From Mobula birostris (taxonomy: Eukaryota): a stretch of DNA of 64,000 nt. Both the position numbers and the translations under genes were made by a program. The stretch is taken from NCBI RefSeq assembly GCF_030028105.1, contig NC_092379.1, forward strand, positions 21,491,309 through 21,555,308, given 5' to 3'. Shown one piece after another: positions 9,351 to 64,000 of this stretch. The notes below the pieces were generated by a model that was not told where the DNA came from, ran no database searches, and saw only the letters and a list, made by a program, of their open reading frames with translations. Position 1 is the first letter of the stretch; each line of letters starts with the position of its first letter.

Positions 9351-9890
9351 CTGCTTCCTGTTTGTGTCTCTGCCTCTCTCTCTCTCAGCTAATGGCTCTG
9401 ACAGTCTGTTTGTACAAAGTGCAGGCAGCTTGTCAGAGCCAGCATCTGACCCTGTGCTCTGTGGGGTGGGAGGGAGAAATGAGGCAGCAGATTGGAGGTT
9501 TGAGAAGTTTGAAATGAGCTGAGGGAAGGTGGAAGGAGAGAGAGAGAAGCAGGAAGGGCAAGGAGAGAGAGATCACAGGGTAAGAGGGAGAGACTCTCCA
9601 AGGTCAGGATACCAGACTAATATCCAAATCTGTGCCATGTTCCTCACTTCCTGCTCTGCACCCTGTGTTCCAGACACTGGGAATCTCCCCGACTTTGTGA
9701 ATGTGTGGCTCTCCAAAATCTGATCCAAGTATATTTTTGTACAATACTGCATTTGGGGGCATTCCCACAGAGACGGACTGAGAATTATTCCTTTCAATCT
9801 CATCCAAATGACTGCTCTTACCTGGATGAAGGAAGCCTCTCATTGATGGGAATAGATCCCATATTCCTGAGTATTAGATGACAGGTGACA
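9351..9890 (-). promoter_or_regulatory. Putative promoter module, copy A
   Basis: Non-TE; tandem GGAA site CAGGAAGTGAGGAAC (9639-9653), second ACAGGAAGC near 9355, GA-rich tract; paralog at 63510-64000. Confidence 0.4.
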
Positions 9891-12125
9891 CTAAAACAGA
9901 TGGTATTGTAGGGAGTGAAGAAGGTTAGCAACAATTACAGTGGGATCTCGATCAGCTGGGTAGGTGAGATGAGGAATTACAAATAGAGTATTATTCAGAT
10001 GAGGATGTCTCAGTGCGATTGCAGAACATTCTCAGTGAGGAGGGTGAGCAAACAGAAGTGGTTGCACACATTGGCTCAAATGACAATTGGAAGAAAAAAT
10101 GGATGTACTGCTGTGCAGTGAATATAGAGAGAAAGAAAAGATGTTTAAATGTAAGACCGCAACAGTGGTCATCTCTGGATTATTCCCAGTACCATGTGCA
10201 GGTGAAGTTGAAAATTGAACATATCATAGATTAGTACATTGCTGAAACCTTGCACAGGGAGCAGGAATTCAGTTCATTTCAGCAATTCAAAGGTTACAAT
10301 TAAAAATAAAATGTTGGGAACTATAGATGAGTAAATCCAGTATCTATGGTAGGAAGCTAATATAACAGAGCAAAAACTGGTGAGAAATTAGAATGGGAAG
10401 ATTTAGAAACATCAGAAGGCAATTTACAAAAACAAAGAGGCAAAACATTGAATACAAAAGTAAGTTAGCCAATAATATTGAAGAGGTTACCAAAAGATTC
10501 TACAGATACATAAAGTGTAAAAGAGAGGTGAGAATGGATATTAGACCACTGGAAAACATTGCTGGAGACGTAGTAATCAGGGACAAAGAAATGATGGACA
10601 AACTGAACAAGTATTTTCCATCAGTCTTCACTGTGAAAGGCACGAGCAGTATGGTGGAACTTCGAGAGTGTCGGGGGCAGGAGTGGGTGATGCTCCTGCT
10701 ACTTGGCTGAAGAGACTGTGGAGGCATTAGTAATGATCTTTCACGAATCAATAGATTCTGGAATAATTCTGGAAGACTGGAAATGTCCAAATGTCTCTCC
10801 ACTTTTCAAGAAGGAAAGAGGCAGAAGAAAGGAAATTGTAGGCCAGTTATTCTGACCTCAGAGGTCAGGAAGAAGTTGGAGTCGATTGCTAAGGTTGTGG
10901 TTTCCATATACTTGGAGGCACTTGATAAAATAGGCTGTAGTCAGCATGGTTTTCTCAAGGAACACCTTGCCTTAGAAATTTGTTGGAATTCTTTGAAGAA
11001 ATATCAAATAGAATACACAAAGAAGAATTGGTGGATATTGTGTACTTGGATTTTCAGAAGGCCTTTGACAAGTTGCTGCACATGAGGCTGCTTAACAAGT
11101 TAAGCGATCAAGATATTACAGCAAAGACACTGGCATGGATAAAGTGGCTGATTGACATGAGGTAAAGAATGGGAATAAAGGGAGCCTTTTCTGTTTGGCT
11201 GCCGATGACTAGTGGTGGGACTGCTCCCTTTAACATGAAATGTCAGAGTCTTGGATGACAGGATTGATGGCTTTGTTGCAATGTTTGCACATGATACAGG
11301 ATGGGTGGAGGGGCAGGTAGTTTTGATGAAGTACAGAGGCTACAGAAGGTCAAAGCCAGATTGGTAGAATGGGCAATGAACTGGCAGATGGAATACAACG
11401 TTCCGAATTGTACGCTCATGCACTTTGGTAGAAGAAATAAAAGGACAGACAATTTTCTAAATGGACAGAAAATTCAAAAATCTGAGGTGCAAATGAACTT
11501 GGGAGTCATTGTGTGGGCTTCCCTAAAGGTTAATTTGCAGGTTGAGTGGGTGGTGATGAAGGCAAAAGTGATGACAGCATTCATTTGAAGAGGACTACAA
11601 GATAAAAGCAAGGATGTAATGTTGAGGCTTTACAAAGCACTGGTGAGGCCTAACGGAGTACTGTGAGCAATTTTGGGCCCCTTATCTGAGAAAAAATGTG
11701 CTGACTTAGTGGAGAGTTCAAAGGAGATTCTCAAAAATGATTCTGGGATTGAAAGGCTCGTCACATGATGAGCATTTCACGTGCTCACTGGAATTCAGAA
11801 GAATGAAGGGTGACCTATTGAAACCGATCAAATGTTGAAAAGCCATGTTAAGAGTGGATGTGGAGAGGATGTTTCCCATGACTGGAGAGTCTAAGACCAG
11901 ATGGCACAGCCTCGGAATAGAGGGGTTTATTTTAGAAGATGAATTCACTGCCACAGGCGGCTGTGGAGGCCAAGTCTCGGCATATTCAAGGTAGAGGTTG
12001 ATAGATTCTTGATTAATCAGGGTATGAAGAGATATGGGTAGTAGATAGACAATTGGGGCTGAGAGGGAAAATGGATCAGCCATGATAATAAAGGCGAAAC
12101 AAACTCAATGGGCCAAATGGCCTTG
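9890..12125 (+). mobile_element. CR1 mosaic of segmental unit A
   Basis: RT piece fused to an esterase piece at cagatgaggatgtctc (~10000), then EN-linker/RT/3' end fragments; same junctions in copies B and C. Confidence 0.75.
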
Positions 12126-12760
12126 GGGTAGATTAGGATTAGTGAGCAAGGCTCTGTGTGTGAGAGATTATGTCTCATCGATTTCCTCTGTTTAGTCCTG
12201 TTCCACCTTCCATAAGACCGAAAGGTTTCTCTCTTTCTGTGCCCATTAGTTCATTCCTCATCTATTAGGGCATAGTAGTTCAGTAGGAATGGCTCCAGGG
12301 GCACTCTGTGTGGGATGTGGGAAGTCTAGGAGACTCCAGTCTCCCAGGTGAACACATCTGCTCCAGGTGCACCGAGTTGCAGCAACTGAGAGAATGTATT
12401 GAGGAATTAGAGCTGCAGCTCGATGACCTTCAACTCATACGGGAGAATGAGGAGGTGATCGACAGGAGGTACAAGGAGGTAGTTACCCTTAGGTTGGGGA
12501 AGACAAATAACTGGGTGAATAGCAGGCAAAGAAAGGGAAACGGACAGCTTCTGCAGAGAACACCTGTGGCTGTTCCCCTCAATAATAAGTATTTAACTTC
12601 AGATAATATTGGGGGGCTGACCTGCCAGTGGGGAACCAGAGGGACCGGGTCTCTGGCACTGATCTGGTGATGAGGCGCAGAAAAGCAGAGAGGTGAAGAG
12701 GAATGCAGTGATGATAGGAGATTCCTCAGACAGCGGGACAGAGACAAGGTACTGTGGGCA
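12125..12760 (+). mobile_element. CR1 5' region/ORF1 (Cys motif, leucine zipper, start of SGNH esterase)
   Basis: HICSRCTELQQLRECIEELELQLDDLQLIRENEE and gtgatgataggagattcc (VMIGDS). Confidence 0.7.
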
Positions 12761-12764
12761 CGAT

Positions 12765-12880
12765 TGAACGACCCAGGCTGCAACTATCAGGACTGCTATC
12801 ATCCAGTACCATCCAGTATCGGGAGGACTGTGATGGTATCAGTCACTACTTCCGATCCCACTGATTCATCGGTCAGTTCA
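12765..12880 (+). mobile_element. Chromoviral Gypsy gag/pro junction fragment (unit A)
   Basis: cccaggctgcaact...ccagtatcgggaggac..gtgatg..gtcactact matches 56915-57005. Confidence 0.55.
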
Positions 12881-12996
12881 ACATCCAGAATCAGAATTAG
12901 ACTCAGGTTTATTATCACCGGCATGTGTCGTGAAATTTGTTGACTTAGCAGCAGCAGCAGTTCAATGCAATACATAATATAAAAGAAAAAATAAAT

Positions 12997-13222
12997 ACTT
13001 TATACTTTATTGTCACCAAACAATTGATACTAGAACACACAATCATCACAGCGATATTTGATTCTGCATTTTCCACTCCCTGGAGTACAAATTGATAGTA
13101 AATATTAAAAGTTTAAATTATAAATCATAAATAGAAAATAGAAAATGGAAAGTAAGGTGGTGCAAAAAATCCGAGAGGCAGGACCGGATATTTGGAGGGT
13201 ACGGCCCAGATCCGGGTCATAA
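12997..13222 (-). mobile_element. 3'UTR-only fragment of the Rex1-like family at 1-1362
   Basis: Reverse complement of 1095-1330 (gacccggatctgggccgtaccctcc...acaataaagt). Confidence 0.8.
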
Positions 13223-13576
13223 TAAATAAATAAATTTCAGGGTATGTATATTGAATAGATTAAAAATCATGCAAAAACAGAAATCATATATATTAAACAA
13301 GTGAGGGAGTGTTCGAGGGTTCAATGTCCATTTAGGAATTGGATGGTAGAGGAGAAGAAGCTGTTCCTGAATCGCTGAGTGTGAGCCTTCAGGCTTCTGT
13401 ACCTCCCACTGATGGTAAAAGTGAGAAAAGGGAATGGTCTGGGTGCTGGGTGTCCTTAACAATGGACGATGTCTTTCTGAGACACCACACCTTGAAGATG
13501 TCCTGGGTACTTTGTAGGCTCATACCCAAGTTGGATCCAACTAAATTGACGACCCTTCCTTCAGTCCTGTGCAGTT

Positions 13577-16500
13577 TGTCGAAGATGGCGCCGGTAACTG
13601 GTGACTTTGCGTCAGCTGTCCCGAGCAAACTGCCCTCTCCACTGTCCTGTAACTGAGAAACTAAAACTCCAATTTAGAAAGATAAAGCTCAACAGCACCC
13701 TGGCGAAGCTACTGACCCAGCTGGAGACCACCGCGCCAGAACTGCTTCTTAAACTCCGGACTGCACCTGGACCCGACCAATGTTCCCGGAGACCCGCGGT
13801 CTGCTACCGTGCCGGAGCGCTTGGAGACACGGCCCATTCCGACCAGCACCTCTCCGGAGCAGACGACCACACAGAAGTGACGGCGGAGACCTCAAGGCGC
13901 CCCAGACGCTTCCCCGGAGCGACCACCGTGAAGCTCCATTGGTGGTCACCCACAGCTGCTGGAAGATGAGACCTCCACCGCCAACTTCAGAAGTTGAGCC
14001 CGAGGCTCGGCTGGAGTGGAGGCCTCCGCAACCGTGACTCAGTTTACAGACTTGTTTGAGCCAGGAGCCCGGCCATCCGGGATTAAGTGTCGGCTTCGGG
14101 GTCCGACCCAATTGACAGCCCTGGCCCCCGGCAGCTGGAAGTGGCAGCGAAGACTCCCCAACTCGGCTCGACCCAGACTGTCCAACGACGCGACCAGCCG
14201 ATCGATCTCCGCAGGATGCCTCCACCTATCTCAAACAGCTGACTACAACACACTGCATCGATGGAAACCTGGAAAGATGCACTATTTACCGAGGAAGCGT
14301 GGGAAAAGAGCTGGGCTGCTGGTCAGACTGAAGCTGAGGGGCTTCAGGGTCCCTATGCCCACCACCCTACTCGCTAATGTGCAAGCCATAGAGAACAAGA
14401 TGGATGATCTTAAAGGGAGATTCACCTACTGCAGGGAGATGAGGAACTGCTGTGTATTCTGTTTCACTGAGACCTGCCTCTCCCCTGCCACCCCCGACTG
14501 TGCCATCTGACTGGAGGGATTTTCGGTCCATCGGATGGACCACACGGCGTCTTCGGGCAAGATGAGGGGAGGTGGTGTCTGCCTACTGATCAACACTGGG
14601 TGGTGATCGGACACAGTGGCACTGACAAGCTCCTGCAGCCCAGACCTGGAACACCTGTCGGTGAACTGTCGTCCCTACTATCTGCCATGGGAATTCACCT
14701 CGGTCATACTGACAGCAGTCTACATTCCCCCCCAGGCAGACATGGAGTGTGCTCTGAACATACTGTATGCCAACATAAGTGAACTTGAGACCAGGTATCC
14801 GGAGGCTTTGCTCATTACAGCTGGGAACTTTAACCAGGCCAACCTCAGAAAGGCGCTGCCAAAGTTATCCCAGCATGTCTCCTGCCCCACTAGAGGCCTG
14901 AATATACTTGACCACTGCTACACAGCAGTGAAGGATGCCTACCGTTCCGTCCCAGGACCTCACTTCAGAAAATCGGACCATCAGGCCGTACTCCTCCCGG
15001 CTTACAAACAGAAACTGAAGCGGGAGGTCACGGTGTCAAAAGTAGTGTCGCGTTGGACGGAGGAAACGGATGAGGTCCTCTGTGACTGCTTTGAATCGGT
15101 GGACTCGTTAGTATTCAAGGACTCGGCAGCTAACCTCGATGAGTATGCCTCAGCTGTCACGGACTTTATTTGGAAATGCACGGAGGACTGTGTGTCTCGC
15201 AAGACGATCCAGGTATTCCTTAACCGGAAACCTTGGATGAATGAGGAGGGCAAGTCCCTTTTAAAGGCTAGAGCTGCGGCTTTTAGGTCCGGGGATACCA
15301 GTCGCTACACGGAATCCAGGCGTGAACTCCGGAAGGCCATTAAGGGTGCCAAGAGGCAATATCGAGCCAAATTGGAAGCCCAGGCTAACCAAAGGGATGC
15401 CAGTAGAATATGGCAGGGTCTAAATGAGATCACTGGGCGCAAAGAAAAGGCTGGGAATATTAATAACTGTGGCGCTTCTCTTCCTGACGAACTTAATGTA
15501 TCCTACGCAAGATTCGAACAGAAGAGGAGCATCCCGCTCCCTCCGGATGAACCAGACCTGGTGGCATCGAGATTCATCGTCACCGAGGACGACGTTAGAA
15601 GGGCCTTCCTGAAGATAAATCCAAGGAAGGCGACGGGCCCAGATGGCGTCCCAGGACGGGTTCTCCGGGCCTGTGCAAGCGACCTAGCTGGAGTGTTTGC
15701 TGACATCTTCAACTGCTCCTTGCTTCAGTCGAACATCCCCTCGTGTTTTAAGAAGGCAACGATAATCCCAGTGCCGAAGAAGAGCAAGGTGGCATGCCTG
15801 AATGACTATCGACCTGTGACTCTGACATCAATTGCTATGAAGTGCTTCGACAGATTGATTATGGCACACATCAACCACAGCCTACCAGTCAACCTCAACG
15901 CTTTGCAATTCGCCTACCGGAGCAACAGGTCAATGGCAGTTCCTCCTTTGAACACCTGGAGAATAAAGATGCATATGTAAGGCTCCTTTTCATTGACTAC
16001 AGCTCTGCCTTTAATACCATCATTCCAAATAAACTGATTCCTAAGCTCCGGAACCTGGGCCTTAGCACTCAGATCTGCAGGTGGATCTTCAATTTCCTCA
16101 CAGGCAGGACCCAGGATGTAAAAATAGAGATCAAGCTCTCCTCTACAATCACTCTGAGCACCGGTGCCCCACAAGACTGTGTACTCAGCCCCCAGCTGTA
16201 CTCACTGTACACCCATGATTGTATAGCCAAGTTTCCATCGAACTCAATATATAAGTTTGCTGATGACACAACAATTGTAGGCCGTATCTCGGGTAATGAT
16301 GAGTTTGAGTACAGAGGGGAAATTAAGAACCTGGTGGCATGGTGCGAAGACAATAACTTATCCCTCAATGTTAGCAAGACGAAGGAATTGGTTGTTGACT
16401 TCAGAAGGAGTAGCAGACCACACGACCCAATTTACATTGGTGGTGCGCAAGTGGAACAGGTCAAAAGCATTAAGTTCCTCGGGGTCAATATCACAAATGA

Positions 16501-17192
16501 CCTGACTTGGTCCAACCAAGCAGAGTTCACTGCTAAGAAGGCCCACCAGTGCCTTTACTTCCTGAGAAAACTAAAGAAATTTGGCCTGTCCCCTAAAACC
16601 CTCACTAATTTTTATAGATACACCGTAGAAAGCATTCTTCTAGGGTGCATCACAACCTGGTATGGAAGTTGTCCTGTCCAAGACCGGATGAAGCTGCAGA
16701 AGATCGTGAACACGGCGCAGCACATCACACAAACCAATCTTCTGTCCGTGGACTCACTTTACACCGCATGCTGTTGGAGCAGTGCTCCCAGGAGAATCAA
16801 GGAAACGACCCACCCACCCAACATACTTTTCATCCCTCTTCCCTCTGGGAGAAGGCTCAGGAGTTTGAAGACTCGTACGGCCAGATTTGGGAACAGCTTC
16901 TTTCCAACTGTGATAAGACTGCTGAACGGATCCGGACCCGGATCTGGGCCGTACCCTCCAAATAGCCGGACCTGCCTCTCGGTTTTCTTGCACTACCTTA
17001 CTTCCCATTTTTCTATTTTCTATTTATGATTTATAATTTAAATTTTTAATATTTACTAATTTTAACTATTTTTAATATTTTTATATTTAATATTTGTAAT
17101 CCAGGGAATGTGAGGTGCAGAATCAAATATCACTGTGATGATTGTACGTTCTAGTACCAATTGTTTGGCGACAATGAAGTATAAAGTAAAGT
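13577..17192 (+). mobile_element. Apparently full-length Rex1-like LINE (~3.6 kb)
   Basis: GC-rich 5' end starting gtcgaagatggcgccgg; APE, RT, 3'UTR and aagtataaagtaaagta tail. Confidence 0.9.
14355..17029 (+). pseudogene. Rex1-like APE-RT polyprotein, disrupted
   Basis: [46 protein letters not shown]; TGA stops at ~14508 and ~14603; 22-nt deletion near 15938 relative to the copy at 91-112 causes a frameshift. Confidence 0.7.
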
Positions 17193-17834
17193 ACTCCCCC
17201 AATACCAGACAGTGATTAGTCTGTCAGACTGCTCTCCACAGTACAGCAATAGAAGTCTCTGAGCATTTTTCTTGACAGACCAAATCTCTTCAAACTCTTC
17301 AGCTAAATCTCTTCAAGTATATTCACTATCTTGCCTTCATTGTAACTGAATCGATATGTTGGGACCAGGTTAGATCCTCAGAGATCTTGACAGTCAGGAA
17401 CTTGAAACCGCTCAGTCTTTCCACTTCTGCTCCCTCTATGCGGATTGGTATGTGTTCCTACGTCTTACCCTTCCTGAAGTCCACAGTCAGCTTTTTAATC
17501 TTACTGATGTTGAGTGCAAGGTTGTTGCTGTGACACCACTCCCCTGGTTGGTGTATCTCGCTCCTGTACGCCCCCTCACCTCCATCTGAGATTCTACCAA
17601 CAATACAATGGTTGTATCATCAGAAAATTTATGGATGGTATTTGAGCAATGCTGAGCCACAGTCATGGGTATAGAGAGGGTAGAGCAGTGAGCTAAGCAC
17701 ACACCCCTGAGGTGCCCCAGTGTTGATCATCAGCGAGGAGGAGACATTATTGCCAATCCACACAGATTGGTTTTCCAGTTAAGAAGTTGAGCATCTAATT
17801 GCAGAGGGAGGTACAGAGGCCCAGGTTCTGTAAC

Positions 17835-20101
17835 TTATCTCCCACTGCGAAAGTTGAGCCAACCCATGCCTGCAACTGTCTTGGACGGTTGCCCACTCTG
17901 TTCCGGGTGGAGCCAGCAACAGACTGTGGATTTGCAGATGAGGATATGGGATTATGTGGAAGAGAGGACCAAAGAGATTCCCGAACATTCTGGGGAACTT
18001 GCAGCCAAGCTTAAGAACACAGCCACCAGGTCTCAAGTAATGGAACAGACTCCATTATGCCGAGCTTTGAAGCCTATTTGCTGGAGGGAACGTACCCTCA
18101 GTAAAGTCTTGCTGCCGTCACCTGAGGATTCCGATTGGGATTTGGACTCTGATTTGGCCTGTTTCCACAAATGAGTTTCATGAGCCTAGGGAGCAGACCC
18201 TGAGGTTGGTTGAATCACCCTGCCACCTGAAAAACCAAAGGGGTCATCCTCGAAAGAAGATCCCGAGGGGTTAGCACACCCAAACCCGTTGAAAGTGCTT
18301 CCATCTACAAGGACATGGAGGAGGTCTTCAGCAAGGGAAAGGCATCAACTCTTCCACCACACCAACCCCACAACTGTGCGATAGACCTGCAGACCGGTAC
18401 CTGTCCCCCAAGGGGTTGATTGTATGTGCTCTTGGGCCCAGAGAGAAGTGTAATGGAAGAGTATATCAAGGGGTCTCTTGCCACAGGCTTCATTCAGCCC
18501 TCCACCACACCTGCTGGCACAGGCTTCTTCTTTGCACAAAAGAACGATGGGAGCCTGCAACGATGCATTAATTATAGGGAATTCAACTGCAAGATGGCCA
18601 AAAATCACTATCCCCTACCACTCATGAAAATAGACTTCGAGATGCTCCAAGGAGCAAGAGTATTCAGAAATCTGGAACGGCAATCGGGTCCATATAAGGG
18701 AAGGTGATGAGTGGAAGACTGCATTCAATACAACGATGGGACACGACGAGTACCTGAGCAACCTACCCCCATTTTGCCACATAATCAGGGTGCTCGTGGC
18801 AATTTGTTGGGGAATCGACACTCTTGTTCACAAGGGCCCAAGTGCAGGGGGGATTTCTAAGAACTACACTCCGGGTCAGCTCTTTGTCCCAAGTTCAATC
18901 TGGTCACAGGTCCTCCAGTGGGGTCATTCGTCAAGAATGACCACACTGCCAGGGATTGCCTCAGGTTTATCAAGAGGAGATACTGGTGGCCCAGAATGAT
19001 GAAAGAGGTTCGGCACTACATGCAGGCATGTGAGGAGTGCGACCAGAACAAGGAGCCTGGTACCCAACCTCAAGGGCTTCTCCACTCCAACCTGTTCCGG
19101 AAAGATGTTGGACACAGACCTCCATGGAGTTTATCACGGGTAATTGACGAATGGTTTTCGAAAGTCTGTAAATTCATTGCCTTGGAGAAGCAACTATCTG
19201 CAGTTGAGACGGCTGAAATTGTCCTGGTCCTGGTCTTCAGGATCCACAGATTCCCGGTGGAAGTTGTCTCACATTGTGGTCCACAATAAATATCACATTT
19301 TTGGAGAGCGTTCTGTAAACTGACAGGGGCAACAGTAAACGATTCCTCTGGGTTTCACCCGCAATCCAAAGTTCAGACGGAGTGAACCAAACAAGATTTA
19401 GATGCCTGGCCTCGAAAAGACCTGATAAGTGGTGTGACCATTTGATGTGGGTCACCCACAACACCATACAGCATTCAGCGCATGGGTTGTCACAGTTCAA
19501 GTGACAGTTTGGTTATCCTCTGCCTCTCTTTCCATACAAGGAGGCAGAGGTTGGGGTCCCTGAGGCCAAAGGTTTCATCCAACGCTGCAAGCAGAAATGG
19601 ATTAGAACAAGAGAAACTTTGCAGCTCCCCAAAACTCCAAAGATCAATCCCACCTTCCAAATCTCTAAATTAAAACTTGTCTGCATCAGCCCCTTAGCCC
19701 CACCACCATCAGCCCCGCTGCCCCGGTGAGAAGACTTTTGTACTTGCGTACTGCTCTGGGTATTTGACAATACCTCATGGACTGGGAAGTATTCGGACTC
19801 CAGGAGAGGTGCTGGGTTCCTGATAGAGATATCTGAGATGCTGCTCTCTTCCACAACTCTCATCACTGCCTCTCCAAGCAGCCAGGGTCGTCAGACATCA
19901 GCGTACATGATGGGTCCTGTTACGAGACGCACCCAACAGCCCCAGCTTCCGGAAAATCGACTCTGACTCTTCGCAGTGCAGATAGCTGGTGCAGCCCCTT
20001 TAAGGATTCTGGATGGTCCTACTAATTGGTAATGATGTTTTGGGCACAAAGATACCCCAGCAACTGGGTCCAAACCATCCTCATCAAGGACTCTCGTCAC
20101 A
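17835..20101 (+). mobile_element. Degenerate, internally deleted chromoviral (sushi-like) Gypsy: pro-RT-IN-chromodomain plus 3' LTR 19918-20101
   Basis: GFIQPSTTPAGTGFFFAQKNDGSLQRCINYR (RT); RYWWPRMMKEVRHYMQACEEC (IN zinc region); QYLMDWEVFGLQERCWVP (chromodomain, ~19770-19820); TGT..CA LTR. Confidence 0.8.
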
Positions 20102-20106
20102 GTCTT

Positions 20107-28595: not shown

Positions 28596-28700
28596 TTTTT
28601 GCAAACACGAGGAAACCTGCAGATGCTGGAAATTCAAGCAACACACACAAAAACTGCTGGTGAATGCAGCAGACCAGGCAGCATCTATAGGAAGAGGTAC

Positions 28701-28736
28701 AGTCGACGTTTCAGGCTGAGACCCTTCGTCAGGGCT
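28701..28736 (-). ncRNA. Minimal type I hammerhead ribozyme motif, core intact
   Basis: agcc-CTGACGA-agggtctcagcct-GAA-ACGT-C-gact; one stem I mismatch. Confidence 0.6.
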
Positions 28737-31395: not shown

Positions 31396-31399
31396 GGTA

Positions 31400-46728: not shown

Positions 46729-46816
46729 GGCGGGAGCACACTAGGTCTCAGCAGCTGTGCCCATTTCGGTGAGAGCGGAGGCGTCCTCCACCACACTGTC
46801 CGGAAAGAAAACAAGG

Positions 46817-50611: not shown

Positions 50612-50635
50612 CTCTGGTCCAAATATCGTTTGGGC

Positions 50636-50649
50636 CGTCAGGGTCACCA
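50636..50649 (-). promoter_or_regulatory. Primer-binding site complementary to tRNA-Trp
   Basis: TGGTGACCCTGACG, 2 nt after the LTR, vs TGGTGACCCCGACG expected from the eukaryotic tRNA-Trp 3' end (13/14). Confidence 0.75.
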
Positions 50650-50651
50650 AT

Positions 50652-50938
50652 TGTAGCGGTGTGCTACACACAGCGCTAGAATAACGACACGTAGTCGGTG
50701 AGTTGGAGTTGCGATAAAAAAGATTTATTCAAACTTCGCGGCCTCCTTTAAAGCCTTCCCCTTCCCGCCCTCCCCGGGCCGGACTGCTGTGGGGAATGCA
50801 TATTCCCAGACCGTTTCGCGCACGGGATTTTCCCGCACTGGTGAAGATGGCCTGGCGCCCTTTTTGGGGGCCGGCCTCTCTGCCGGCGCGCGTCGTTTTG
50901 TGAGCCGGTTCGTGTGTGCTGGAAAGTGGGTCCCCACA
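50652..50938 (-). repeat. 5' LTR of the CsRN1-like Gypsy (287 bp)
   Basis: TGTGGGGA...CCGCTACA; AATAAA at ~50724-50729; CpG-rich. Confidence 0.85.
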
Positions 50939-53900: not shown

Positions 53901-54300
53901 GAAACAGATCGAATGTTGAAAAGCCTCAATGGAGCGGCTGTGGAGAGGATGTTTCCAATGGTGGGAGAGTCTTTAAGACCAGAGGACACAGCCTCAGAAT
54001 AGAGGGGTGTCCTGCCAGAACAGAGGTGAGGACAAAATTCTTTCAGAGAAGTGGTGAATCTGTGGAGTTCGCTGCCACAGACGGCTGTAGGGGCAAAGTG
54101 TTTTGAGGCAGATGTTGATAGATTCTTGACTAGTTAGGGCAAGAAGGGATACGGGAAGCAGACAGGAGATTGGGGATGAGGGAAAATCGATCAGCCATGA
54201 TGAAGTGGCAAAGCAGATTCGATGGGCCAAATGGTCTAATTCTACTGTTATATCTTAAGCTTTTAACGTAGGAGTTCTGAGAGTTAAGAGCTATTTCAGA
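50939..54300 (+). mobile_element. CR1 mosaic of segmental unit B
   Basis: Collinear with 9910-12125, including the RT/esterase junction at ~51035. Confidence 0.8.
52410..53294 (-). mobile_element. Solo LTR (885 bp)
   Basis: TGTAAC...GTAACA; perfect 4-bp TSD aatg (52406-52409 / 53295-53298); minus-strand TATA ~53170 and AATAAA ~52472; empty site in copy C. Confidence 0.85.
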
Positions 54301-55482
54301 AAACTGGGGTAGATTAGGATTAGTGAGTAAGGCTCTTCGTGTGGGAGATTATGTTTCATGAGTTTCCTCTGTTTAGTCCCTGCTTCACCTTCCGTAAGAC
54401 CATAAGGTTTCTCTCTTTCTGCTCTCATTTCTTCATTACTGATCTATTAGGACTAGTAGTTTAGTGGGAATGGCTCCAGGAGCAGTGTTTTGCATTCTGT
54501 GTGGGATGTGGGGTGTCTGGGAGACTCCAGTCTCCTAGGTGAACACATCTGTACCAGGTGCGCCCAGTTGCAGCAACTGAGAGAATGTATTAAGGAACTG
54601 GAGCTGCAACTCGATGACCTTCGACTCGTACGGAAGAATGAGGAGGTGAAAGACAGGAGCTACAGGGAGGTAATAACCCCAAGGTTGCAGGAGACTGTCA
54701 GGAGGTTGGGGCTGAGAGAGAAAATGGATCAACCACGATGAAATGTCGAAGCAGACGCGATGGGTCAAAATGGCCTAATTCTGCTATATCATGATTTTAA
54801 TGGAGGAGTTCTGAAGCTTGAGAGCTATTTCAAAAAACTGGGGTAGATTAGGATTAGTAAACAAGGTTGTGTGTGTGGGAGATTATGTCTCATGAATATG
54901 AACATTTGATCTGTTTCAATGAGGTCATTTTTCTGAAATCCACTGAACACAGGCCCAAAGCCATCAAACGGTCTTCATATGACAAGCCTTTCAATCCAGG
55001 AATCATTTTTGTGAATCTCATTTGAACCTTTTCCAATGTCACCACATCCTTTCTTTGATATGGGGCCAAAATTCTCACAATAATCGAAGTTGGCCTCACC
55101 AGTGCTTTCTGAAGTCTCAACAACTGGGTGACTGTCAGGAGAAGGAGGGGAAATGCACAACCAGTGCAGAGAGCACCTGTGGCTGTTCCCCTCAATAATA
55201 AGTGTTTAACTTTTCATACTACTGAGGGGTCGACCTTCCAGTGGGGAGCCAGAATGACCGGGTCTCTAGCACTGAGTCTGGTGATGTGGCTCAGAAGAGC
55301 AGAGATATCAAGAGGTCTGCAGTGTTGATAGGAGATTCCTCGGTCAGAGAAACAGAGATGAGGTTCTGTGGGCGCAGTAGAGACATGCAGATGGTAGGTT
55401 GTATCACTACTGCCAGGCTTAGGGATGTCTCAAATTGTGCCCATGGCAATCTCAAGGGTGAGGGTGAGCAGCCAGAAGTCTT
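54300..55482 (+). mobile_element. CR1 5'/ORF1 region of unit B with a complex templated insertion
   Basis: HICTRCAQLQQLRECIKELELQLDDL; VLIGDS; ends at gaagtctt before the Gypsy LTR. Confidence 0.7.
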
Positions 55483-55663
55483 TGCTATGAGACACTCCCA
55501 ACTGCACCAACTTCCGGGATCTAGGCACACGAACACTCGGGAGTACGGATAGCTGGCACGGCCCCTTTTAGGATTCAGGATGATCCCGCTAATTGGTAGT
55601 CCTGGTTTTGGTGCTAAGAATTGACTATATAATGAATGACTGAACAGATATTTGATGCCACAT

Positions 55664-55851
55664 GGAATATCATCAAGCAACGCACAGAAAATCCTGGAGG
55701 AACTCAGCAGGCCAAGCAGCATCTATGGAAAAGAGTATAGTTGACGTTTCAGGCTGGGACCCTTCATCATGGTGAGGGGTCTGCTGAGTTCCTCCAGAAT
55801 TTTGTGTGTGTTTCTTGGATTTCCAGCATCTGCAGATTTTCTCTTGTTTGT
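55664..55851. repeat. Penelope-derived fold-back element with decayed hammerhead, inside the LTR
   Basis: Arms ctggaggaactcagcag / ctgctgagttcctccag; ATGATGA-agggtcccagcct-GAAACGTC on the minus strand. Confidence 0.65.
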
Positions 55852-57230
55852 AAGGAGCAGCTGATTAGTTTTGGTGCTCAATTGTAAGGTGACTAGTGAT
55901 ATCATCTCGTGTTTGCTTTGTGTCCAAATCTAGTTTGATACAGCGTATAAAATCTTGCTTCGCATACCCCAGCAATTGGTCCAAACCATCCTCATCAAGG
56001 ACTCTCATCTCAGTACGATTGAGCCACATGGACCCAGTGGGATATCAAAATCTTTCCTGCACTGTGGCCAGCTGCAGTGAAATGATTTCCAGACAAGGTC
56101 TGGAGATCCAGAACCTCCAGGTAACCATACATCAACTTGCATAAAGAGGAAGCCAAGTTCACTCAGGAGAGCCAGTCAGTTCTTCTGTGGAGCCAGCACT
56201 TCTTCCATCCTTGGAAAGATTCGATGGTACCCAGGTTCTTGCCACAGCTTCCTCACACAATACTCATTAGTGTTTAAACTACAGCCATCCCAGTTCCCTT
56301 CAGAGCACGGAAAAGTGGCCTTCATTACCTCTCTCGTGTCTGGAAGACCCTGACCTGGGCTACTATGCACTGGGGACTCAGTCAGAGATCTGCTCGGATT
56401 CAGAGGAATTCATGGCCGCCATGAGGAAGGTATTTCATCACCCCAGAGGAGCCTGCGAGCCTCGGGCCGCCTGATGAAGATTCAGCACGGGGTATAGTCC
56501 ACGGCCGACTACACAGTCGAATTTTGGATCTTGGCCCAGGAAAGTGGTTGGAACAGGGAGATCTTGGCCGTCACGCCGCCATGAATTCCAAGATGAACTG
56601 AAGTATTCCCTCGCCTCAACAGAGCCAGCAGAGAACTCAAAAGTTCTGATTGACCAGTCCATCCATCTCAATAATTATCTGTCAGAGCGAAAGTGGGACC
56701 ACTTCAGGAAATCAAAGGGAGCCACTCCAAGGCCGGTTCCTACACATCGTAGTTCCACTCCCCAGCCTTAGACCATAACCAGCCTGTCACCTGCTCAAGG
56801 TCCAGTCAAACCCATGCAGCTCAGTTGCATGAGACTCTCTGCCGATGAGAGATCCCGGGATCGGAATCGAGATCGCTGGTTTACCTGCAGGGAAGTATGT
56901 CACCAGCGGGCCGTATGTCCCAGGCTGCAACTGTTGGGACGGCTAAGACGTCCAGTATCGGGAGGACAGTGATGCTGGTAGTCACTACTCCCTTCCCACT
57001 GATTCTGGGTTCGTGCTGAAGGCAGAGTTTTCCAGGGTAACAACTTAAGGCAAGTGGGGACTTCAGTGTACTAGGGCAGCGGGTAATTTTTTGGATTTAA
57101 GAACAGCCCATTGGTTCAACATACTGCAGCGAGAGTTGAGTCAACCCATGTCTGCAAATGTCTTGGACGGTCGTCCTCCAGGTTCTGGACAGATCCAGCT
57201 GTGGACAGACTGTGGATTTGCAGATGAGGA

Positions 57231-57793
57231 CAGATAGAGAGATGGATACTTTATTGATCCCAAAGGAAATTACAGTGTCACAGTAGCATTACAAGTGCAC
57301 AGATATAAATATTAAAAGCAGAAAGAATAAAAAATAAGTTACCTCAAACTGTCTATCAGGAGGGAGCCATCACTTCCCTGGCTATAGGTTGACTCATTAT
57401 AGAGCCCAATGGCCGAGAGTATGAATGACCTCATGTAGCTCTGTTTGCAGCAGCACACTAGTCTTAGTCTACCACTAAAAGTGCTCCTCTGTTCAGCCAA
57501 GGTGGCATGCGGCGGGTGAGAAACATTGTCCAGAATTGCCAGGGTTCTCCGATGGGTCCTTTGTTCCACCACAGCCTCCAGTATATCCAGTTGGACTCCG
57601 ATAACACAGCCAGCCTTTCTCATCAGTGCACTGAGCCTGTTAGTATCACCCGTGTTGATGTCATTGCCCCTGGACACCACCCCATAGAAGACTGTACTGG
57701 CAACAACAGACTGGTAGAACATGTGAAGGAAAGGCCTGCATCCTCCAAAGGATCTCACTCTCCTCAGGAAGTAGAAGTAACTCTGGCCCTCTT
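57231..57793 (-). mobile_element. Rex1-like 3' fragment inserted in the Gypsy protease (copy B)
   Basis: GQSYFYFLRRVRSF..FYQSVVAS; gatcaataaagtatcc tail. Confidence 0.8.
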
Positions 57794-58157
57794 TGTGGAA
57801 GACATTAGTTTCTACATTATTGACTCTCCACTCATACCCCTGATCCTTGGGTCCCCTTGGCTGTCCCAGAATAACCCATCCAATAAATGGAGGGAGGGGA
57901 GAATCATTGCTTGGTCCAGTCATTGTAAGACAGTTTGTTTGTGGCATGGTGTTCCAAGTCCCGGACTCTCCTGTGACCAACAACCAGTAATGGGGCAGCC
58001 TTAGAGCTTCTGGACACCTAGTCCTGCCCTCAAGGATGGACAAGCCGGTTCCAGCAAATGGGACTGTGTGGGTCCTGACACTCTCGAGTCGGGATCCCAC
58101 AGGAACCGGAGAGAGGGAAACTCTAGTTCAGGAGAGGACCAAAGAGATGCCCAAACA

Positions 58158-59564
58158 AAGAGTCCACCTTGAGATTGCCACTGGAGATGACGAACCTCGA
58201 GAATGAAACAGTCATCACGTGAAACTCGGAGTTCTCCAACTTGACATAAAGTTCATGCTCTGGAAATCTCTTTAAAATGTCCCTTCATAAACAACGTTCT
58301 CCTTCATGGGTTTTGGGAAGATAAAGATGTTGTCCAAGTCAACTAAGGCATACTTATGGAGAGGATCCTGGAGCATGTCATTTGTAAATGGCTGCAGCAT
58401 TCACAAGGCTGAAGGGCATAACCAGGTACTCGTCGTGCCCCATCAGTGTACTGAATGCAGTTTTACACTCATCGCCTTCCCTTATATGGACCAGATTGTA
58501 TTCACTCCGTACGTCCAGTTTTGTGAACACGCTCGCTCCGTGGAGCATCTCGAATGCCGTTTTCATGAATGGTAGTGGGTAGTGATTTTTGGCTGTCATG
58601 CGGTTTAATCCCTTATAAGCAATGCACGGCCGCTGGGTCCCACCCTTGCTTTGTACGAAGAAGAAGCCTGCGCAGGCAGGTGAGGTGGAGGGCTGAATGA
58701 AGCCCATGGCAAGACCCTCCTTCATATGGTCTTCCATTACACTTCTCTCTGGGCCCAAGAGCAGGTACAATCAATTCTGCGGGGTAAAGAAATGAGCAGC
58801 AGGTCAATCGCACAGTCGTAGGGTCAGTGCGGGGGAAGACGTGAGGCCTGTCTCTTGTCAAAGACCTCCTGAAACTCCTTGTGGAATGAAAGGATTTCGA
58901 CCCTTTTGGGTGTTGCTCTCTCCTTCAGACCTTCCTGTGAGAATGACTCCTGAGCCTTGGGCAGCATGAGTGATTCAATCGACCTCAGAGACCCCTCCCT
59001 ATGCTCAAAGATCATTCATGGAAACGGGCCAAATCGGAGTCCAAATCCCCGTCTAAATCCTCAGGCAATGGCAGCAAGGCATTACAGAGGGTTCCTTCCC
59101 TCCTGGAAATTGGTTTCATGGTTCAGTGTAAAGCAGTCTTTTCCCTTCCTTGAGACCTGGCACCTGGATTCCTTAAACTTGTCTGCAAGTTCCCCAGACT
59201 GTTTGGGCATCTCTTTGGTCCTCTCCTGAACTAGAGATTCCCTCTCTCTAGTTCCTGTGGGATCCCGACTCAAGAGTGTTCAGGACTCTCACAGTCCCAT
59301 TGGCTGGAACCAGCTTGTACATCCTTGAGGGCAGGACTAGGTGTCCAGAAGGTCTGAGGCTGCCCCATTACTGGTCATTGGTCACAGGAGAGTCTGGGAC
59401 TTGGAATACCATGCCACAAACAAACTGCCTTACAATGACTGGACCAAGCAATGATTCTCCTCTCCCTCCGGTTCATGGATGGGTTATGCTGGGACAGTCA
59501 AGGGTAACCGAGGATCAGGGGTATGAGTGGAGAGTCAATAATGTAGAAAGTAATGTCTTCCACA
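58158..59564 (-). mobile_element. Chromoviral Gypsy copy C: protease-RT
   Basis: [54 protein letters not shown]. Confidence 0.8.
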
Positions 59565-60036
59565 GGAAGGGCCAGAGTTACTTCTACTTCCTGAGGAGAG
59601 TGAGATCCTTTGGAGGATGCAGGCCTTTCCTTCACATGTTCTACCAGTCTGTTGTTGCCAGTACAGTCTTCTGTGGGGTGGTGTCCTGGGGCAATGAGAT
59701 CAATATGGGTGATGCTAACAGGCTCAATAAACTGATTAGAAAGGCTGGCTCTGTTATAGGAGGGAGTCAAAGTGGATATACTGGAGGCTGTGGAAGAGCA
59801 AAGGGCCCATCGGAGAATCCTGGCAATTCTGGACAATGTTTCTCACTCTCCACATGCCACCTTGGCGAAACAGAGGAGCACTTTTAATAATAGACTAAGA
59901 CAAGTGTGCTGCTGCAAACAGAGCTGCATGAGGTCATTCATACCCTTGGCCATTGGGCTCTATAATGAGTCAATCGATAGCCAGGGAAGTGATGCCCCCT
60001 CCTGGTAGACAGTTTGAGGTAACTTATTTTCTATTC
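59565..60036 (+). mobile_element. Rex1-like 3' fragment (copy C, paralog of 57231-57793)
   Basis: Reverse complement of 57322-57793. Confidence 0.8.
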
Positions 60037-60045
60037 GTTCATTCT

Positions 60046-61895
60046 TTTTCCAATATTTTTATTAAATTTCATATACATAAATACAGAATTCATAAGGATA
60101 CTTATTATAAATCAGTATAAGGTAGCACATAATGCACTATATATAAATCACACTGATACCATCCTGGTTTCCCATATTCATGATCAATCAAATTAAATAA
60201 ATTGAATTATGAAATACAATAATATAGTTAATTATGTTATAAAAAGATCTACAACCCCTACCAAGACAAAGCTGGGTGGTTAAAAAAAAACAAAAAAATA
60301 GAGTACGATATAGTGTTTTATAATAGTAGACCAGATCTATATTTTAATAACAATAACAATTCAAAGATTTTCAAAATAGTTCAGAAAGGGTCCCCATAAC
60401 GTTTGAAAATCTTGATTAGAATCAGAAATCAAACAACGAATCTTCTGTAAATTTAAACATGACATAATATCGCATTACCATTGAGCATGTGTGGGGGGGA
60501 GCAACCTCCTTCCATTTAAGCAAGATCGCCCTCCTAACCATATGAGAAATAAAAGCCAGTACCCTCAAATGAGAAGGCTCCAAAATTATAGTCTTTCTTC
60601 AACGATACCAAATAAGGCAGTCAAAGGATTGGGTTTAAAATTAACTTTAAAAAGTACAGAAAAAGTTTGGAATACATCTTTCCAACATTTTTCAAGGCTT
60701 GAATATGACAAAAACATCTGAATTAATAAAGCTTCTCCATTATTACATCTGTCACGTAAAGGAGATATATCTGCAAAAAAACGAGAGAGCTTGTCTTTAG
60801 ACATATGAGCCCTCAGTACCACTTTAAATTGTGGGAGGGAATGATGAGCACGTAATGATGAAGAGTTAACTATTTTGAAAACAGCCCTCCAGATCTCATC
60901 AGATAATGAAGTCTGTAAATCCTTTTTCCAATCTTTCTTTAATTTTGTCTAAAGGAGCCATTCTCAGTCCCAACAACAGACCATAAATATAAGATATTGA
61001 GCCAGTATCAAAAGGTTTCAAGTTAAAAATTACGTCTATTATGTTCTTTTCCGGGCTGGTGGGAAATGTATGTAGTTTAGATCTTAAAAAATCTCTAATC
61101 TGTAGATATTGAAAAAAGTGGGTATTTGATGTTATATTTCACTGAGAGCTGCTCAAAAGAAGAAAAATACCCTCCAACAAACAGATCCTGAAATCGTTTA
61201 ATGCCTAATCTATCCCATTCTCTAAAATACAGATCGGTTGTAGATGGTTAAAAAAAATTAGAAAAAAATAGGACTAGAAAGATAAAATCTCAATAAACTT
61301 AAATGTTTTTTAAACTGTAGCCAGATCCTCAAAGTGTGTTTAACCACCAAACTGTTAGTTAATTTATTTAAAGATAAAGGAAGAGAGTATCGAAGAAGAG
61401 AGATAATAGAAAATTTTGCAACAGAGCTGGCTTCCAAAAAAGACCCATATTGGACAATCCTCACAATCAATATAATATAACCAGAACGTGAGCTTTCGTA
61501 TGTTAATTGCCCAATAATATAACCCAAAATTGGGCAGAGCAAGGCCTCCATTCTTTTTAATTTTTTGAAGGTGCGCTTTATTTAATCGAGGTTTTCTGTT
61601 CTTCCATATATAAGAAGAAAGAATCGAATCTAAAGAATCAAAAAAAGATTTAGGAATAAAAACAGGTGCAACTAGAAAAAGGTATATAAATTTAGGTAAA
61701 ATATTCATTTTAATAGAATTAATTTGACCAATCAATGATAAAGAGAGAGGCAACCAATTAGAAAGTGTCTTTTTCACATAAATCATTGAGGTTAGAAAAT
61801 TTTCTTTGAACAGATCTTTATAATTCTTTGGAATTGTTACACCCAAATATGTAAATTGTTTTCTTACAATTTTAAAAGGAAGGTTAATATTGAAT
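60046..61895 (-). mobile_element. L1-clade LINE, 5'-truncated ORF2 C-terminus + 3'UTR
   Basis: LPLSLSLIGQINSIKMNILPKFIYLF..GGLALPNF..YYWA; AATAAA near 60060; 9-bp TSD gttcattct (60037-60045 / 61896-61904). Confidence 0.85.
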
Positions 61896-63510
61896 GTTCA
61901 TTCTCCTAATCTGACTAAATCCTTATGTAGCCTCTCTACTTCCTCAAAACTACCTGCCCCTTCACCTATCTTCATATCATCTGCTAACTTTGCAACAAAG
62001 CCATCAATTCCGTCATCCAAGTCATCAACATTATATGTTCCATGAAACAGTCCCAACACAGAACCCTGCAGAACACCACTAGTCACCGACAGCCAACCAG
62101 AAAAGGCTCCTCTTCCCACTCTTTGCCTCCTGCCAATCAGCCACTTTATCCATGCTAATATCTTTCCTGAAATACCATGGGCTCGTAACGTTTTAAGCAG
62201 CCTCACATGTGGAACCTTGTCAAAGGCCTTCTGAAAATCCAAGTGCACTTCATCCACTAATTCTCCTCTGTCTTTTCCGCTTTGTATTTCTTTGAAATTC
62301 TAGCAGATTTGTTAGGCAAGATTTTCACTTGAGGAAACCATGCTGACTGTGCCTATTTTATCATGTGCCTCCATGTACTCCAAAACGAATCAACTCCAAC
62401 ATCTTCCCAACCACTGAGGTCAGACCAACTGGCCTATAATTTCCTTTCTTCTGCCTCTCTCCCTTCTTGAAGAGTGGAGTGACATTTACCATTTTCCATG
62501 CTTTCGGAATCATTTCAGAATCTAGTGATTCCTGAAAGATCATCACTGATATCTCCACAATCCCTTCAGCCACCTCTTTCAGAACCCGGGGGTGTACACC
62601 ATCGGTCCAGTTGAATTATTTACATTCAGACCTTTCAGATTCTCAAGAACCTTCTCCCTAGTAATGGCAGCTTCACTCACTTCTGCTCCCGACACTCTCG
62701 AACTTCCACAATACTGCTTGTCTCTTCCATAGTGACGACTGATGCAAAATACTTGTCCAGTTTGTCCACCATTTCCTTGTCCCCATTACTACCTCTCCAG
62801 CATTGTTTTCCAGTGGTCTGATATCCACTCTCACCTCTCTTTTACACTCTATGTATCTGAAGACACTTTTGGTATCCTCTTTAATATTATTGGCTAGCTT
62901 ATTTTCATATTCCATCTTTTGCTTCATTAAGATCTTTTTCGTTTACTTCTCCTGGTTTTTAAAATCTTCCCAATCTAACTTTCCACTGAATTTTGCTTAA
63001 TTATATTAACTTCCTACCATTGATATTGGGTTCACGGTCCATAGTTCCTCGCATTTTTTTTTGCAACCCTTCTTAAATTAAGGCCCAAAATTATCCGAAC
63101 AGACCCCAGAAAACATCTGAAAGGGCGGAGAACTGAATTCCTGCTCCCTGTGCAAGGTCTCAGCAATGTATTAATGTACAATGTGTTAAATTTTTAACCT
63201 CCCCAGCACACGGCATTGGGAATTATCCAGAGATTATCACTGATGGAGTCTTACATCTTAACCTGTTCTCCAACTCCCTATTTTCACTCCACAGCAGCAC
63301 ATCCATTTTTCTGCCTATTGTCATTTGAACCAATGTGTGCAACCACTTCTATCAGCTCACCCTCCCCACTGCGAATGTTCTGCCATCACTCAGAGACATC
63401 CTCATCTGAATTGTACTCTATTTGTAATTCCTCAGTCCACCTACTCAGCTGATCAAGATCCCGCTGTAATTGTTGCTAACCTTTTTCACTGCCCACAATA
63501 CCGTCTATTT
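61896..63510 (-). mobile_element. CR1 mosaic of segmental unit C (inverted)
   Basis: Reverse complement of 50940-52409 joined to 53299-53430, and of 9890-11380. Confidence 0.8.
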
Positions 63511-64000
63511 CAGTGTCACCTGTCATCTAATATTCAGGAATATGGGATCAATTCCTATCAGTGAGATGACTTCTTCATCCAGGTATCAGCAGTCATTTGG
63601 ACCAGGATAAGATTCAAAGGAACAATTCTCAGTCCATCTCCAGGGAAATGCCCCCTAATTCAGTGTTGTGTGAAAATATAATTGGATACGGTTTTGGACA
63701 CACACACACACACATTCAGATAGTGGGGGAGATTCCCAGTGCTAAAACACAGGTTGCAGAGCAGGAAGTAAGGAACGTGGCTTGGATTTGTATATTAGTC
63801 CAGTACATTGGCCGTGGAGGGTCTCTCCCTTTTACTCTGTGATCTCTCCCTTCATTCCCTTCCTTGCATTTTTCTCTCAAACTGACCTTTCTCTCTCTCT
63901 TTCCACCTTCTCAAAGCTCATTTAAGACTTTTCAAACCTCCTATTTTTTGCCGCATTCCTCCCTCCCGCCCCATAGCACACGGGGACAGGAGCTGGCTCT
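63510..64000 (+). promoter_or_regulatory. Putative promoter module, copy C (runs off window end)
   Basis: Reverse-complement paralog of 9435-9890; CAGGAAGTAAGGAAC at 63762-63776. Confidence 0.4.

What the first reader, a model, noticed from the sequence alone, without database searches (positions are those of the whole stretch)
9435..64000. One gene-front cassette triplicated: A (+), B (+), C (-)
An unusual CR1 RT-to-esterase fusion (cagatgaggatgtctc) recurs at ~10000, ~51035 and ~63400 (reverse). It is followed by the same ordered CR1 pieces and the same chromoviral Gypsy (the Gypsy beyond a deletion in C). Shared junctions indicate segmental duplication rather than independent insertion. 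The unit carries a promoter module in A and C, so this looks like a birth-and-death gene cluster with TE-rich duplicons: A fires left, C fires right, B has lost its front end.
Basis: partly seen in the sequence, partly recalled or inferred. Interest (0 to 1): 0.7.

Follow-up and report, generated by a model that had tools for sequence, protein, structure and literature searches.

The report
Old duplicated stretch of transposon debris
A several-kilobase patchwork of dead transposon pieces in a manta-ray chromosome was copied twice as plain DNA, the second time as a fold-back mirror copy; this is ordinary genome wear, and nothing shows it carries a promoter or belongs to a gene.

Summary
The 16-mer is exact at 9996(+), 51032(+) and 63393(-). 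It marks a non-canonical join of a CR1 reverse-transcriptase tail to the middle of a CR1 ORF1 esterase.

- **Shared structure.** All three copies also share a second odd join, esterase to mid-ORF2 with the endonuclease missing. A and B are colinear in seven blocks. B and C share one 5'-truncated LINE insertion at the same site.
- **Divergence.** It is uniform across unrelated pieces: K2P about 0.22 for A versus B/C, and about 0.10 for B versus C.
- **Copy number.** Public contigs put the join region at roughly 5-10 single-locus equivalents. The adjoining CR1 body reaches thousands.
- **Reading.** These are DNA-level segmental duplications. First A split from the B/C ancestor. Then a fold-back inverted duplication made B and C, with its centre at 58157/58158.

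The gene-front or promoter reading is not supported. The shared front piece diverges at the neutral rate and is CpG-poor. It has no octamer, and no recombination signals or Ig-like reading frames occur in the window. All 276 long reading frames with a Pfam hit are transposon domains.

The "Gypsy" shared by B and C is mostly an L2-like LINE fragment. No chromodomain was found.

Unchecked notes from this scan report similar duplications around IgW clusters on this chromosome.

The parts
9435..9886 (+). Copy A, front piece. It is low-copy and does not look like a transposon. It matches only C 64000-63553, and that match runs to the window edge.
   Evidence: K2P to C is 0.222. CpG observed/expected is 0.06-0.26.
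9887..9999 (+). Copy A, old CR1 RT C-terminal fragment, ending at join J1 (RT to esterase; motif at 9996-10011).
10000..10390 (+). Copy A, CR1 ORF1 esterase from its middle to its end. It is followed by join J2, which leads to mid-ORF2 with the endonuclease missing.
   Evidence: equivalent to 37509-37702 of the in-window CR1. One search shows J2 aligned in A, B and C.
10391..12123 (+). Copy A, CR1 ORF2 from the post-endonuclease region through RT to the true CR1 3' end.
   Evidence: One search shows two other CR1 copies ending at the same point.
12124..12867 (+). Copy A, 5' part of a second CR1 (5'UTR, ORF1 N-terminus, esterase GDS block), then short block r (12772-12867).
12868..17846 (+). 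Extra block of nested transposons found only in A. It includes an L2-like LINE at about 13750-17188. B has 124 bp at this position.
17847..19290 (+). Copy A, Gypsy-type LTR-element remnant. Block q is 17847-17944. The RT N-terminal region matches C. An integrase zinc domain lies at 18861-19286.
50940..52410 (+). Copy B, RT fragment, J1 (51032), esterase, J2 and the first half of the CR1 ORF2. B has no front piece.
   Evidence: It is 88.7% identical to C.
52411..53294 (+). 885-bp insertion found only in B, with a short duplicated target (ATGTAA..ATGT).
53295..57230 (+). Copy B: the rest of the CR1, the second CR1's 5' part, and blocks r and q. It holds two stretches found only in B (54695-55119 and 55373-56919).
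57303..58131 (-). Copy B, piece P: a 5'-truncated L2-like LINE 3' fragment lying antisense to the unit. A lacks it.
58132..58157 (+). Copy B, the last 26 bp of Gypsy flank before the fold-back breakpoint at 58157/58158.
58158..59225 (-). Copy C, Gypsy RT region. It forms the roughly 1-kb unpaired spacer of the B/C palindrome. Positions 59225-58423 match A 17962-18756.
59200..60062 (+). Copy C, piece P: the same LINE fragment at the same site as in B, 90.9% identical.
60063..61898 (.). AT-rich repeat (31% GC) found only in C. It replaces the equivalents of A 11371-17944.
   Evidence: Summed contig depth is 100-550 times a single locus.
61899..64000 (-). Copy C: the first half of the CR1 ORF2, J2, esterase, J1 (63393-63408), RT fragment and front piece. 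It runs off the window end.

Best explanation
A, B and C are three copies of one ancestral stretch of at least 5.5 kb of intergenic DNA. That stretch was already a patchwork of dead retroelements.

**Order of pieces in the ancestral stretch.**
1. A low-copy front piece.
2. A fragment of an old CR1 RT.
3. A CR1 copy that is 5'-truncated inside its ORF1 esterase and lacks its endonuclease.
4. The 5' part of another CR1, butted against the first one's 3' end.
5. A Gypsy-type element.

**Order of events.**
1. The stretch was duplicated as DNA, giving A and the B/C ancestor.
2. In the B/C ancestor an L2-like LINE fragment (P) inserted into the Gypsy.
3. A fold-back type inverted duplication then made B and C. 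They form a palindrome with a spacer of about 1 kb and a breakpoint at 58157/58158.
4. Each copy then changed on its own.
   - A gained 5 kb of nested elements.
   - B gained an 885-bp insertion with a target duplication. Its front now ends against a 10-kb retroelement.
   - C lost about 3.9 kb.

**Shown and inferred.** The copies, the joins, the order of events and the low copy number are shown. The fold-back mechanism is inferred. So is the conclusion that the unit has no function of its own and is a passive duplicon in a region rich in duplicated IgW antibody gene clusters.
For: - **Motif and joins.** The motif is exact three times against 0.08 expected. J1 and J2 align in all three copies. 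By the canonical CR1 layout the esterase ORF1 lies upstream of the APE-RT ORF2 (PMC13343379), so both joins are non-canonical.
- **Colinearity.** Seven A/B blocks are colinear and in the same orientation.
- **Front piece.** It is shared only by A and C and matches nothing else in the window.
- **Piece P.** P is a LINE fragment. It sits at the same site in B and C, with the same 5' truncation. A is uninterrupted at that site, with 18 bp in its place.
- **Fold-back breakpoint.** It can be read base by base.
- **Divergence.** It is uniform by block. A versus B/C is 0.15-0.27, and B versus C is 0.05-0.12.
- **Tree of the CR1 body.** (B,C) has support 100/99. A is its sister with support 80/84.
- **Copy number from contigs of four runs.** The esterase and join bins hold about 5-10 single-locus equivalents. 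The front piece holds 4-8. The adjoining CR1 ORF2 holds 5,000-20,000. Three related species show the same pattern.
Against: - Summed contig depth is only a rough guide to copy number. It still suggests more copies of the front piece (4-9) than the two seen here, so further copies lie elsewhere and their locations are unknown.
- In the CR1 body alone, A is barely closer to B/C than an unrelated local copy is (D, 21897-22434). The case for A therefore rests on the joins, the front piece and the colinearity.
- The A-C match runs off the window, so the true left end of the unit is unseen.
- Probable RNA runs hold 20-29% of the sampled words of 6900-9900. This could not be localised.
Confidence: 0.8

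Rival explanations
1. The unit is a low-copy composite mobile element. It would be either a rearranged CR1 derivative mobilised in trans, or the cargo of a larger transposon. A, B and C would then be separate insertions.
For: The front piece and esterase bins reach 4-10 single-locus equivalents, which is more than the copies seen here. CR1 3' ends can be mobilised in trans; this rests on established knowledge of LINEs.
Against: - Homology crosses the CR1 3' end into unrelated elements, in the same order.
- B and C share a secondary LINE insertion and flank each other as a palindrome with a readable breakpoint.
- No termini or target duplications were found for the unit.
- Divergence is equal across unrelated pieces.
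Confidence: 0.1
2. This is the first reader's view: a gene-front cassette. On this view the front piece is a promoter or first exon of paralogous genes lying left of A and right of C, in a birth-and-death cluster.
For: - An IgW gene lies about 22 kb left of the window, and other IgW clusters lie nearby (unchecked scan notes).
- Probable RNA runs hold 20-29% of the words of 6900-9900.
Against: - The front piece evolves at the neutral rate (K2P 0.222).
- It is CpG-poor.
- There is no octamer near A or C and no recombination signal or Ig-fold pattern.
- Every Pfam hit among the 276 reading frames of 76 aa or more is a transposon domain.
- No Rfam family matches.
- The 9.4 kb left of A holds only transposon fragments and featureless DNA.
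Confidence: 0.06
3. The resemblance is chance co-occurrence of abundant transposon families, or an assembly artefact that duplicated one locus.
For: The CR1 ORF2 and piece P belong to families with thousands of copies.
Against: - The joins are low-copy and identical in the three copies.
- The copies differ by 10-22%, so they are not collapsed or duplicated reads.
- An independent public contig covers C 62896-63155, across J2, with one mismatch (record 7).
Confidence: 0.02

Closest known systems
Ancient segmental duplications (low-copy repeats) in vertebrate multigene regions
   Same: - Blocks of several kilobases built from unrelated repeats are copied with their internal joins intact.
- Copy number is low.
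- Divergence is uniform within each duplication event.
- Lineage-specific insertions and deletions came later.
   Different: - A versus B/C is only about 80% identical, far below the 90% operational threshold used for segmental duplications. B versus C sits at about 90%.
- No gene is carried within the part seen.
Fold-back (inverted) duplications, meaning palindromes with an unpaired spacer
   Same: - B and C are inverted arms.
- They are separated by about 1 kb present only in the C orientation.
- There is one sharp breakpoint, at 58157/58158.
   Different: - The mechanism is inferred from the structure alone.
- The arms have since diverged by 10% and are heavily remodelled.
Canonical CR1 LINE: esterase-type ORF1 upstream of APE-RT ORF2 (PMC13343379, PMC3905857)
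   Same: Every coding piece of the mosaic maps onto a CR1 ORF1 or ORF2. A nearly complete CR1 with the canonical order lies in the same window, at about 36571-40700.
   Different: In the mosaic the order is RT tail, then mid-esterase, then mid-ORF2, with the endonuclease absent. The 5' end of a second CR1 then follows the 3' end of the first. It is debris from nested insertions, not an element.

Membership tests
Segmental duplication | Homology spans several unrelated sequence elements, in the same order and orientation, with shared internal joins. | tested here: met
   J1, J2, the CR1 3'-end to CR1 5'-end join, and blocks r and q. There are seven colinear blocks in A/B and three in B/C.
Segmental duplication | Low copy number in the genome. 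| tested here: met
   The join and front bins hold about 4-10 single-locus equivalents. The adjoining CR1 holds 5,000-20,000. This is a rough measure.
Segmental duplication | At least 1 kb at 90% identity or more (the usual operational threshold). | tested here: inconclusive
   B/C are 89-92% identical. A versus B/C is 78-87%. The A split is older than the usual definition covers.
Segmental duplication | Equal divergence of unrelated pieces within one duplication event. | tested here: met
   K2P by block is 0.15-0.27 for A versus B/C and 0.05-0.12 for B versus C.
Dispersed composite transposon | Many copies on many chromosomes. | tested here: not met
   Depth over the joins is low. Where the extra copies lie on the chromosomes could not be tested.
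Dispersed composite transposon | Defined termini with target-site duplications. | tested here: inconclusive
   No termini were found. The left end runs off the window in C and is cut in B. The right end is cut by the fold-back.
Promoter or gene-front module | An adjacent gene or first exon. | tested here: not met
   There is no host domain among 276 reading frames. There is no Ig pattern or recombination signal.
Promoter or gene-front module | Conservation above the neutral rate. | tested here: not met
   Front piece K2P is 0.222, against 0.22-0.27 for the dead transposons beside it.
Promoter or gene-front module | Transcription starts there. | not testable with these tools
   Probable RNA runs were found, but the single read-laying run had already been used.
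Chromovirus (Gypsy with a chromodomain) | A chromodomain at the integrase C-terminus. | tested here: not met
   Only RVT_1 and Integrase_H2C2 were found in the A and C remnants. No Chromo hit appears anywhere in the window. The remnants are heavily deleted, so this is weak evidence.

The most novel reading that the evidence does not exclude
The unit may belong to a small family of duplicons. Contig depth suggests about 4-9 copies of the front piece. These duplicons may flank the duplicated IgW antibody gene clusters on this chromosome. If so, its dated joins and nested insertions would trace the order in which ray antibody clusters were born. The shared front piece might then be a retained regulatory or transcribed element.
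Probability: 0.1. Interest if true: 0.5.

Novelty: new member of a known kind. Interest (0 to 1): 0.2.

Why it matters
Mostly it does not matter. It is a well-resolved example of how transposon-rich intergenic DNA is copied and reshaped.

Its modest value is as a marker. The shared joins and the nested LINE insertion give a clear relative timeline: the A split, then the LINE insertion, then the fold-back, then private changes. This lies in a chromosome region that holds several IgW clusters. If the further copies prove to flank those clusters, the unit could help reconstruct how cluster-type antibody loci expand in cartilaginous fish.

Tried and rejected
- **Circular permutation.** I tested whether the mosaic is one CR1 cut once and circularly permuted. 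The breakpoints fall close together, at 37478-37565 of the in-window CR1. But in B the second CR1's 5' part overlaps the first piece's start by about 60 bp, at only about 65-70% identity. They are therefore two different CR1 copies.
- **A second CR1 continuing after the Gypsy.** I tested whether the second CR1 resumes after the Gypsy in A, at 20044 and beyond. The overlapping stretch is only about 50% identical to B's, so this is rejected.
- **LTRs.** I searched for LTR pairs around the 40.8-50.9 kb retroelement and found none.
- **Protein search across J1.** The search with the reading frame spanning J1 found no candidate.
- **Exact look-up.** Ten local reading frames were looked up in the public protein collection. 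None was present.
- **The scan's own index.** The search by sequence was blank.
Full report
**Setting**

The window is transposon-dense DNA with no assembly gaps. Unchecked notes from this scan say the genome is a manta ray. They place an IgW antibody gene about 22 kb left of the window, and further IgW clusters 140 kb to the left and 0.37-1.2 Mb to the right.

I scanned the 276 stop-to-stop reading frames of 76 aa or more against Pfam. Every hit was a transposon domain, apart from one weak match to a domain of unknown function (DUF6346, E = 0.00019):
- reverse transcriptase;
- endonuclease;
- integrase and RNase H;
- GDSL esterase;
- zinc knuckle;
- the LINE C-terminal domain PF09004;
- DUF7041.

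The window has no Ig-fold pattern, no recombination signal sequence and only one octamer, at 31513. No Rfam family reaches its threshold.

**The observation**

The 16-mer is exact at 9996(+), 51032(+) and 63393(-), against 0.08 matches expected by chance.

In frame, all three copies read from a CR1 RT C-terminal motif straight into the middle of an SGNH esterase. Mapped onto a nearly complete CR1 in the same window (about 36571-40700), the esterase starts at the equivalent of 37509. The RT piece is only about 110 bp long. Canonical CR1 elements carry the esterase ORF1 upstream of the APE-RT ORF2 (PMC13343379). This join (J1) is therefore not part of a normal element.

A second odd join (J2) follows. 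The end of the esterase runs into ORF2 after the endonuclease, with the endonuclease missing. J2 also aligns in all three copies.

**Extent and order**

Sensitive self-comparison gives seven colinear A/B blocks in the same orientation, spanning 9904-17944 in A and 50940-57230 in B.

B/C blocks:
- 50940-52410 = 63500-62028;
- 53295-53428 = 62032-61899;
- 57303-58157 = 60062-59200.

A/C blocks:
- 9435-10712 = 64000-62651;
- 10704-11371 = 62572-61899;
- 17962-18756 = 59225-58423.

Order of pieces in the unit:
1. The front piece.
2. The RT fragment.
3. The esterase.
4. CR1 ORF2 through to its true 3' end. Two other CR1 copies end at the same point.
5. The 5'UTR and ORF1 N-terminus of another CR1.
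6. Short blocks r and q.
7. A Gypsy-type remnant.

The front piece (A 9435-9886, C 64000-63553) matches nothing else in the window. The A-C match runs to the window edge, so its true end is unseen.

- The 0.86-kb piece shared by B and C is not Gypsy. Its reading frame is 51-52% identical to proteins carrying PF09004. It also aligns with the C-terminus of an in-window L2-like LINE ORF2.
- This piece, P, lies antisense to the unit, inside the Gypsy remnant.
- In A the site is uninterrupted and holds 18 bp where B and C have P. In B and C the two flanks of P match the two sides of A's site. P has the same 5' truncation in both.
- Real Gypsy sequence (RVT_1, integrase zinc domain) is in A and C. 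B keeps about 100 bp before P and 26 bp after it.
- No chromodomain was detected.

**The palindrome**

After those 26 bp, B meets the far end of C's Gypsy RT region on the opposite strand, at 58157/58158. This leaves about 1 kb (58158-59199) as an unpaired spacer. The structure is what a fold-back inverted duplication leaves. The mechanism itself is inferred.

**Timing**

K2P distances by block:
- A versus B/C is 0.15-0.27 for seven of the eight blocks longer than 100 bp, including the front piece at 0.222. The eighth, the 113-bp A/C RT fragment, is 0.139.
- B versus C is 0.09-0.12.
- The roughly 100-bp RT fragment gives lower values, on few sites.

On the CR1 body, (B,C) is a clade with support 100/99. 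A is its sister with weak support (80/84). An unrelated local copy, D (21897-22434), falls just outside. The CR1 body alone would therefore not prove that A is a duplicate. The joins, the front piece and the colinearity do.

Private changes followed the duplications:
- B has an 885-bp insertion with a duplicated target.
- B also has a 424-bp complex insert that holds a second copy of the CR1 3'-to-5' join.
- A has a 5-kb nested block.
- C has a deletion of about 3.9 kb, with a 1.8-kb AT-rich repeat in its place.
- B's front is missing beyond 50940. There a retroelement with a DUF7041 gag, an integrase and an inserted full-length LINE begins. It has no LTR pair.

**Is it a dispersed composite?**

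I laid Logan contigs of four DNA runs on 58001-64000 at 80% likeness or more. One run is of this species and three are of relatives.

The locus's own contigs have depth of about 22 in run X1. In multiples of that depth, summed depth is:

| Region | Single-locus equivalents |
|---|---|
| Esterase and J2/J1 bins (63001-63400) | 5.6-9.7 |
| Bin with the RT fragment | about 41 |
| Front piece | 4-8 |
| CR1 ORF2 (61801-63000) | 5,000-21,000 |
| Part of P | about 2,700 |

- Hundreds of contigs leave the window's sequence at 62919-62920 and continue with a different consensus. That is where the abundant CR1 family departs from this mosaic.
- The three related species show the same profile.
- Summed contig depth is not a true copy number. 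Some of the esterase depth may come from canonical CR1 ORF1 copies.
- The result rules out a high-copy composite. It also suggests a few more copies of the front piece than the two seen here.

**The promoter claim**

- The front piece shows no excess conservation.
- Its CpG observed/expected is 0.06-0.28.
- It has no octamer.
- No gene lies within the 9.4 kb to its left.
- One loose end remains. Runs that are probably RNA hold 20-29% of the sampled words of 6900-9900.

**Verdict**

The finding is real as an observation, and the inference of segmental duplication is correct. The functional reading as a gene-front cassette has no support. It is an ordinary, old, well-resolved pair of duplications in transposon debris.

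Unchecked notes from this scan report inverted segmental duplications around IgW clusters on the same chromosome piece (s1-145680, s1-146207). They also report a thrice-repeated CR1 composite 1.9 Mb away (s1-146189). The pattern may therefore be regional. I could not test that.

Noticed in passing
window 36571-40700 (+): A nearly complete canonical CR1: ORF1 N-terminus, esterase (37290-37895), endonuclease (38106-39275) and RT. It is cut near 40800 by the neighbouring retroelement. I used it as the reference for mapping the mosaic.
   Followed up: partly
window 40817-50940 (-): A retroelement with a DUF7041 gag-like ORF (49187-50671) and an integrase (40817-41875). It is split by a LINE with long open ORFs (832 aa endonuclease-RT at 44230-46728; CCHC ORF1). 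No LTR pair was found in 39800-51300.
   Followed up: partly
window 6900-9900: Runs that are probably RNA, from this species and a close relative, hold 20-29% of the sampled words of this otherwise featureless, unrepeated stretch left of copy A. Which part they hold is unknown.
   Followed up: no
window 19918-20043 and 55483-55611: A roughly 126-bp element (74% alike) lies next to a CR1 esterase in both A and B, but on opposite sides of it and out of colinear order. This is unexplained.
   Followed up: partly
window 54699-55122: Inside B's second CR1 there is a 424-bp insert. It is made of a second copy of the CR1 3'-end to CR1 5'-end join (54699-54895) plus an inverted CR1 RT piece (54901-55122, 89.6% identical to 53687-53917).
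   Followed up: partly
window 10001, 12772, 20044, 55470: Four separate CR1 breakpoints fall within about 90 bp of each other in the ORF1 esterase, at the equivalent of 37478-37565 of the in-window CR1. This could be chance or a fragile or preferred truncation site.
   Followed up: partly
window 28597-29530: Another note calls this a Penelope element with hammerhead ribozymes. The Rfam scan of the whole window at gathering thresholds found no family. Inverted arms 28639-28931 / 29529-29223 are present.
   Followed up: partly
window 1-1338 vs 15847-17188; 4725-5503 vs 25278-24502: Two further pairs are about 89.5% identical, close to the B/C level. The first pair is an L2-like LINE RT. They are probably transposon family copies rather than part of the duplication.
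   Followed up: no
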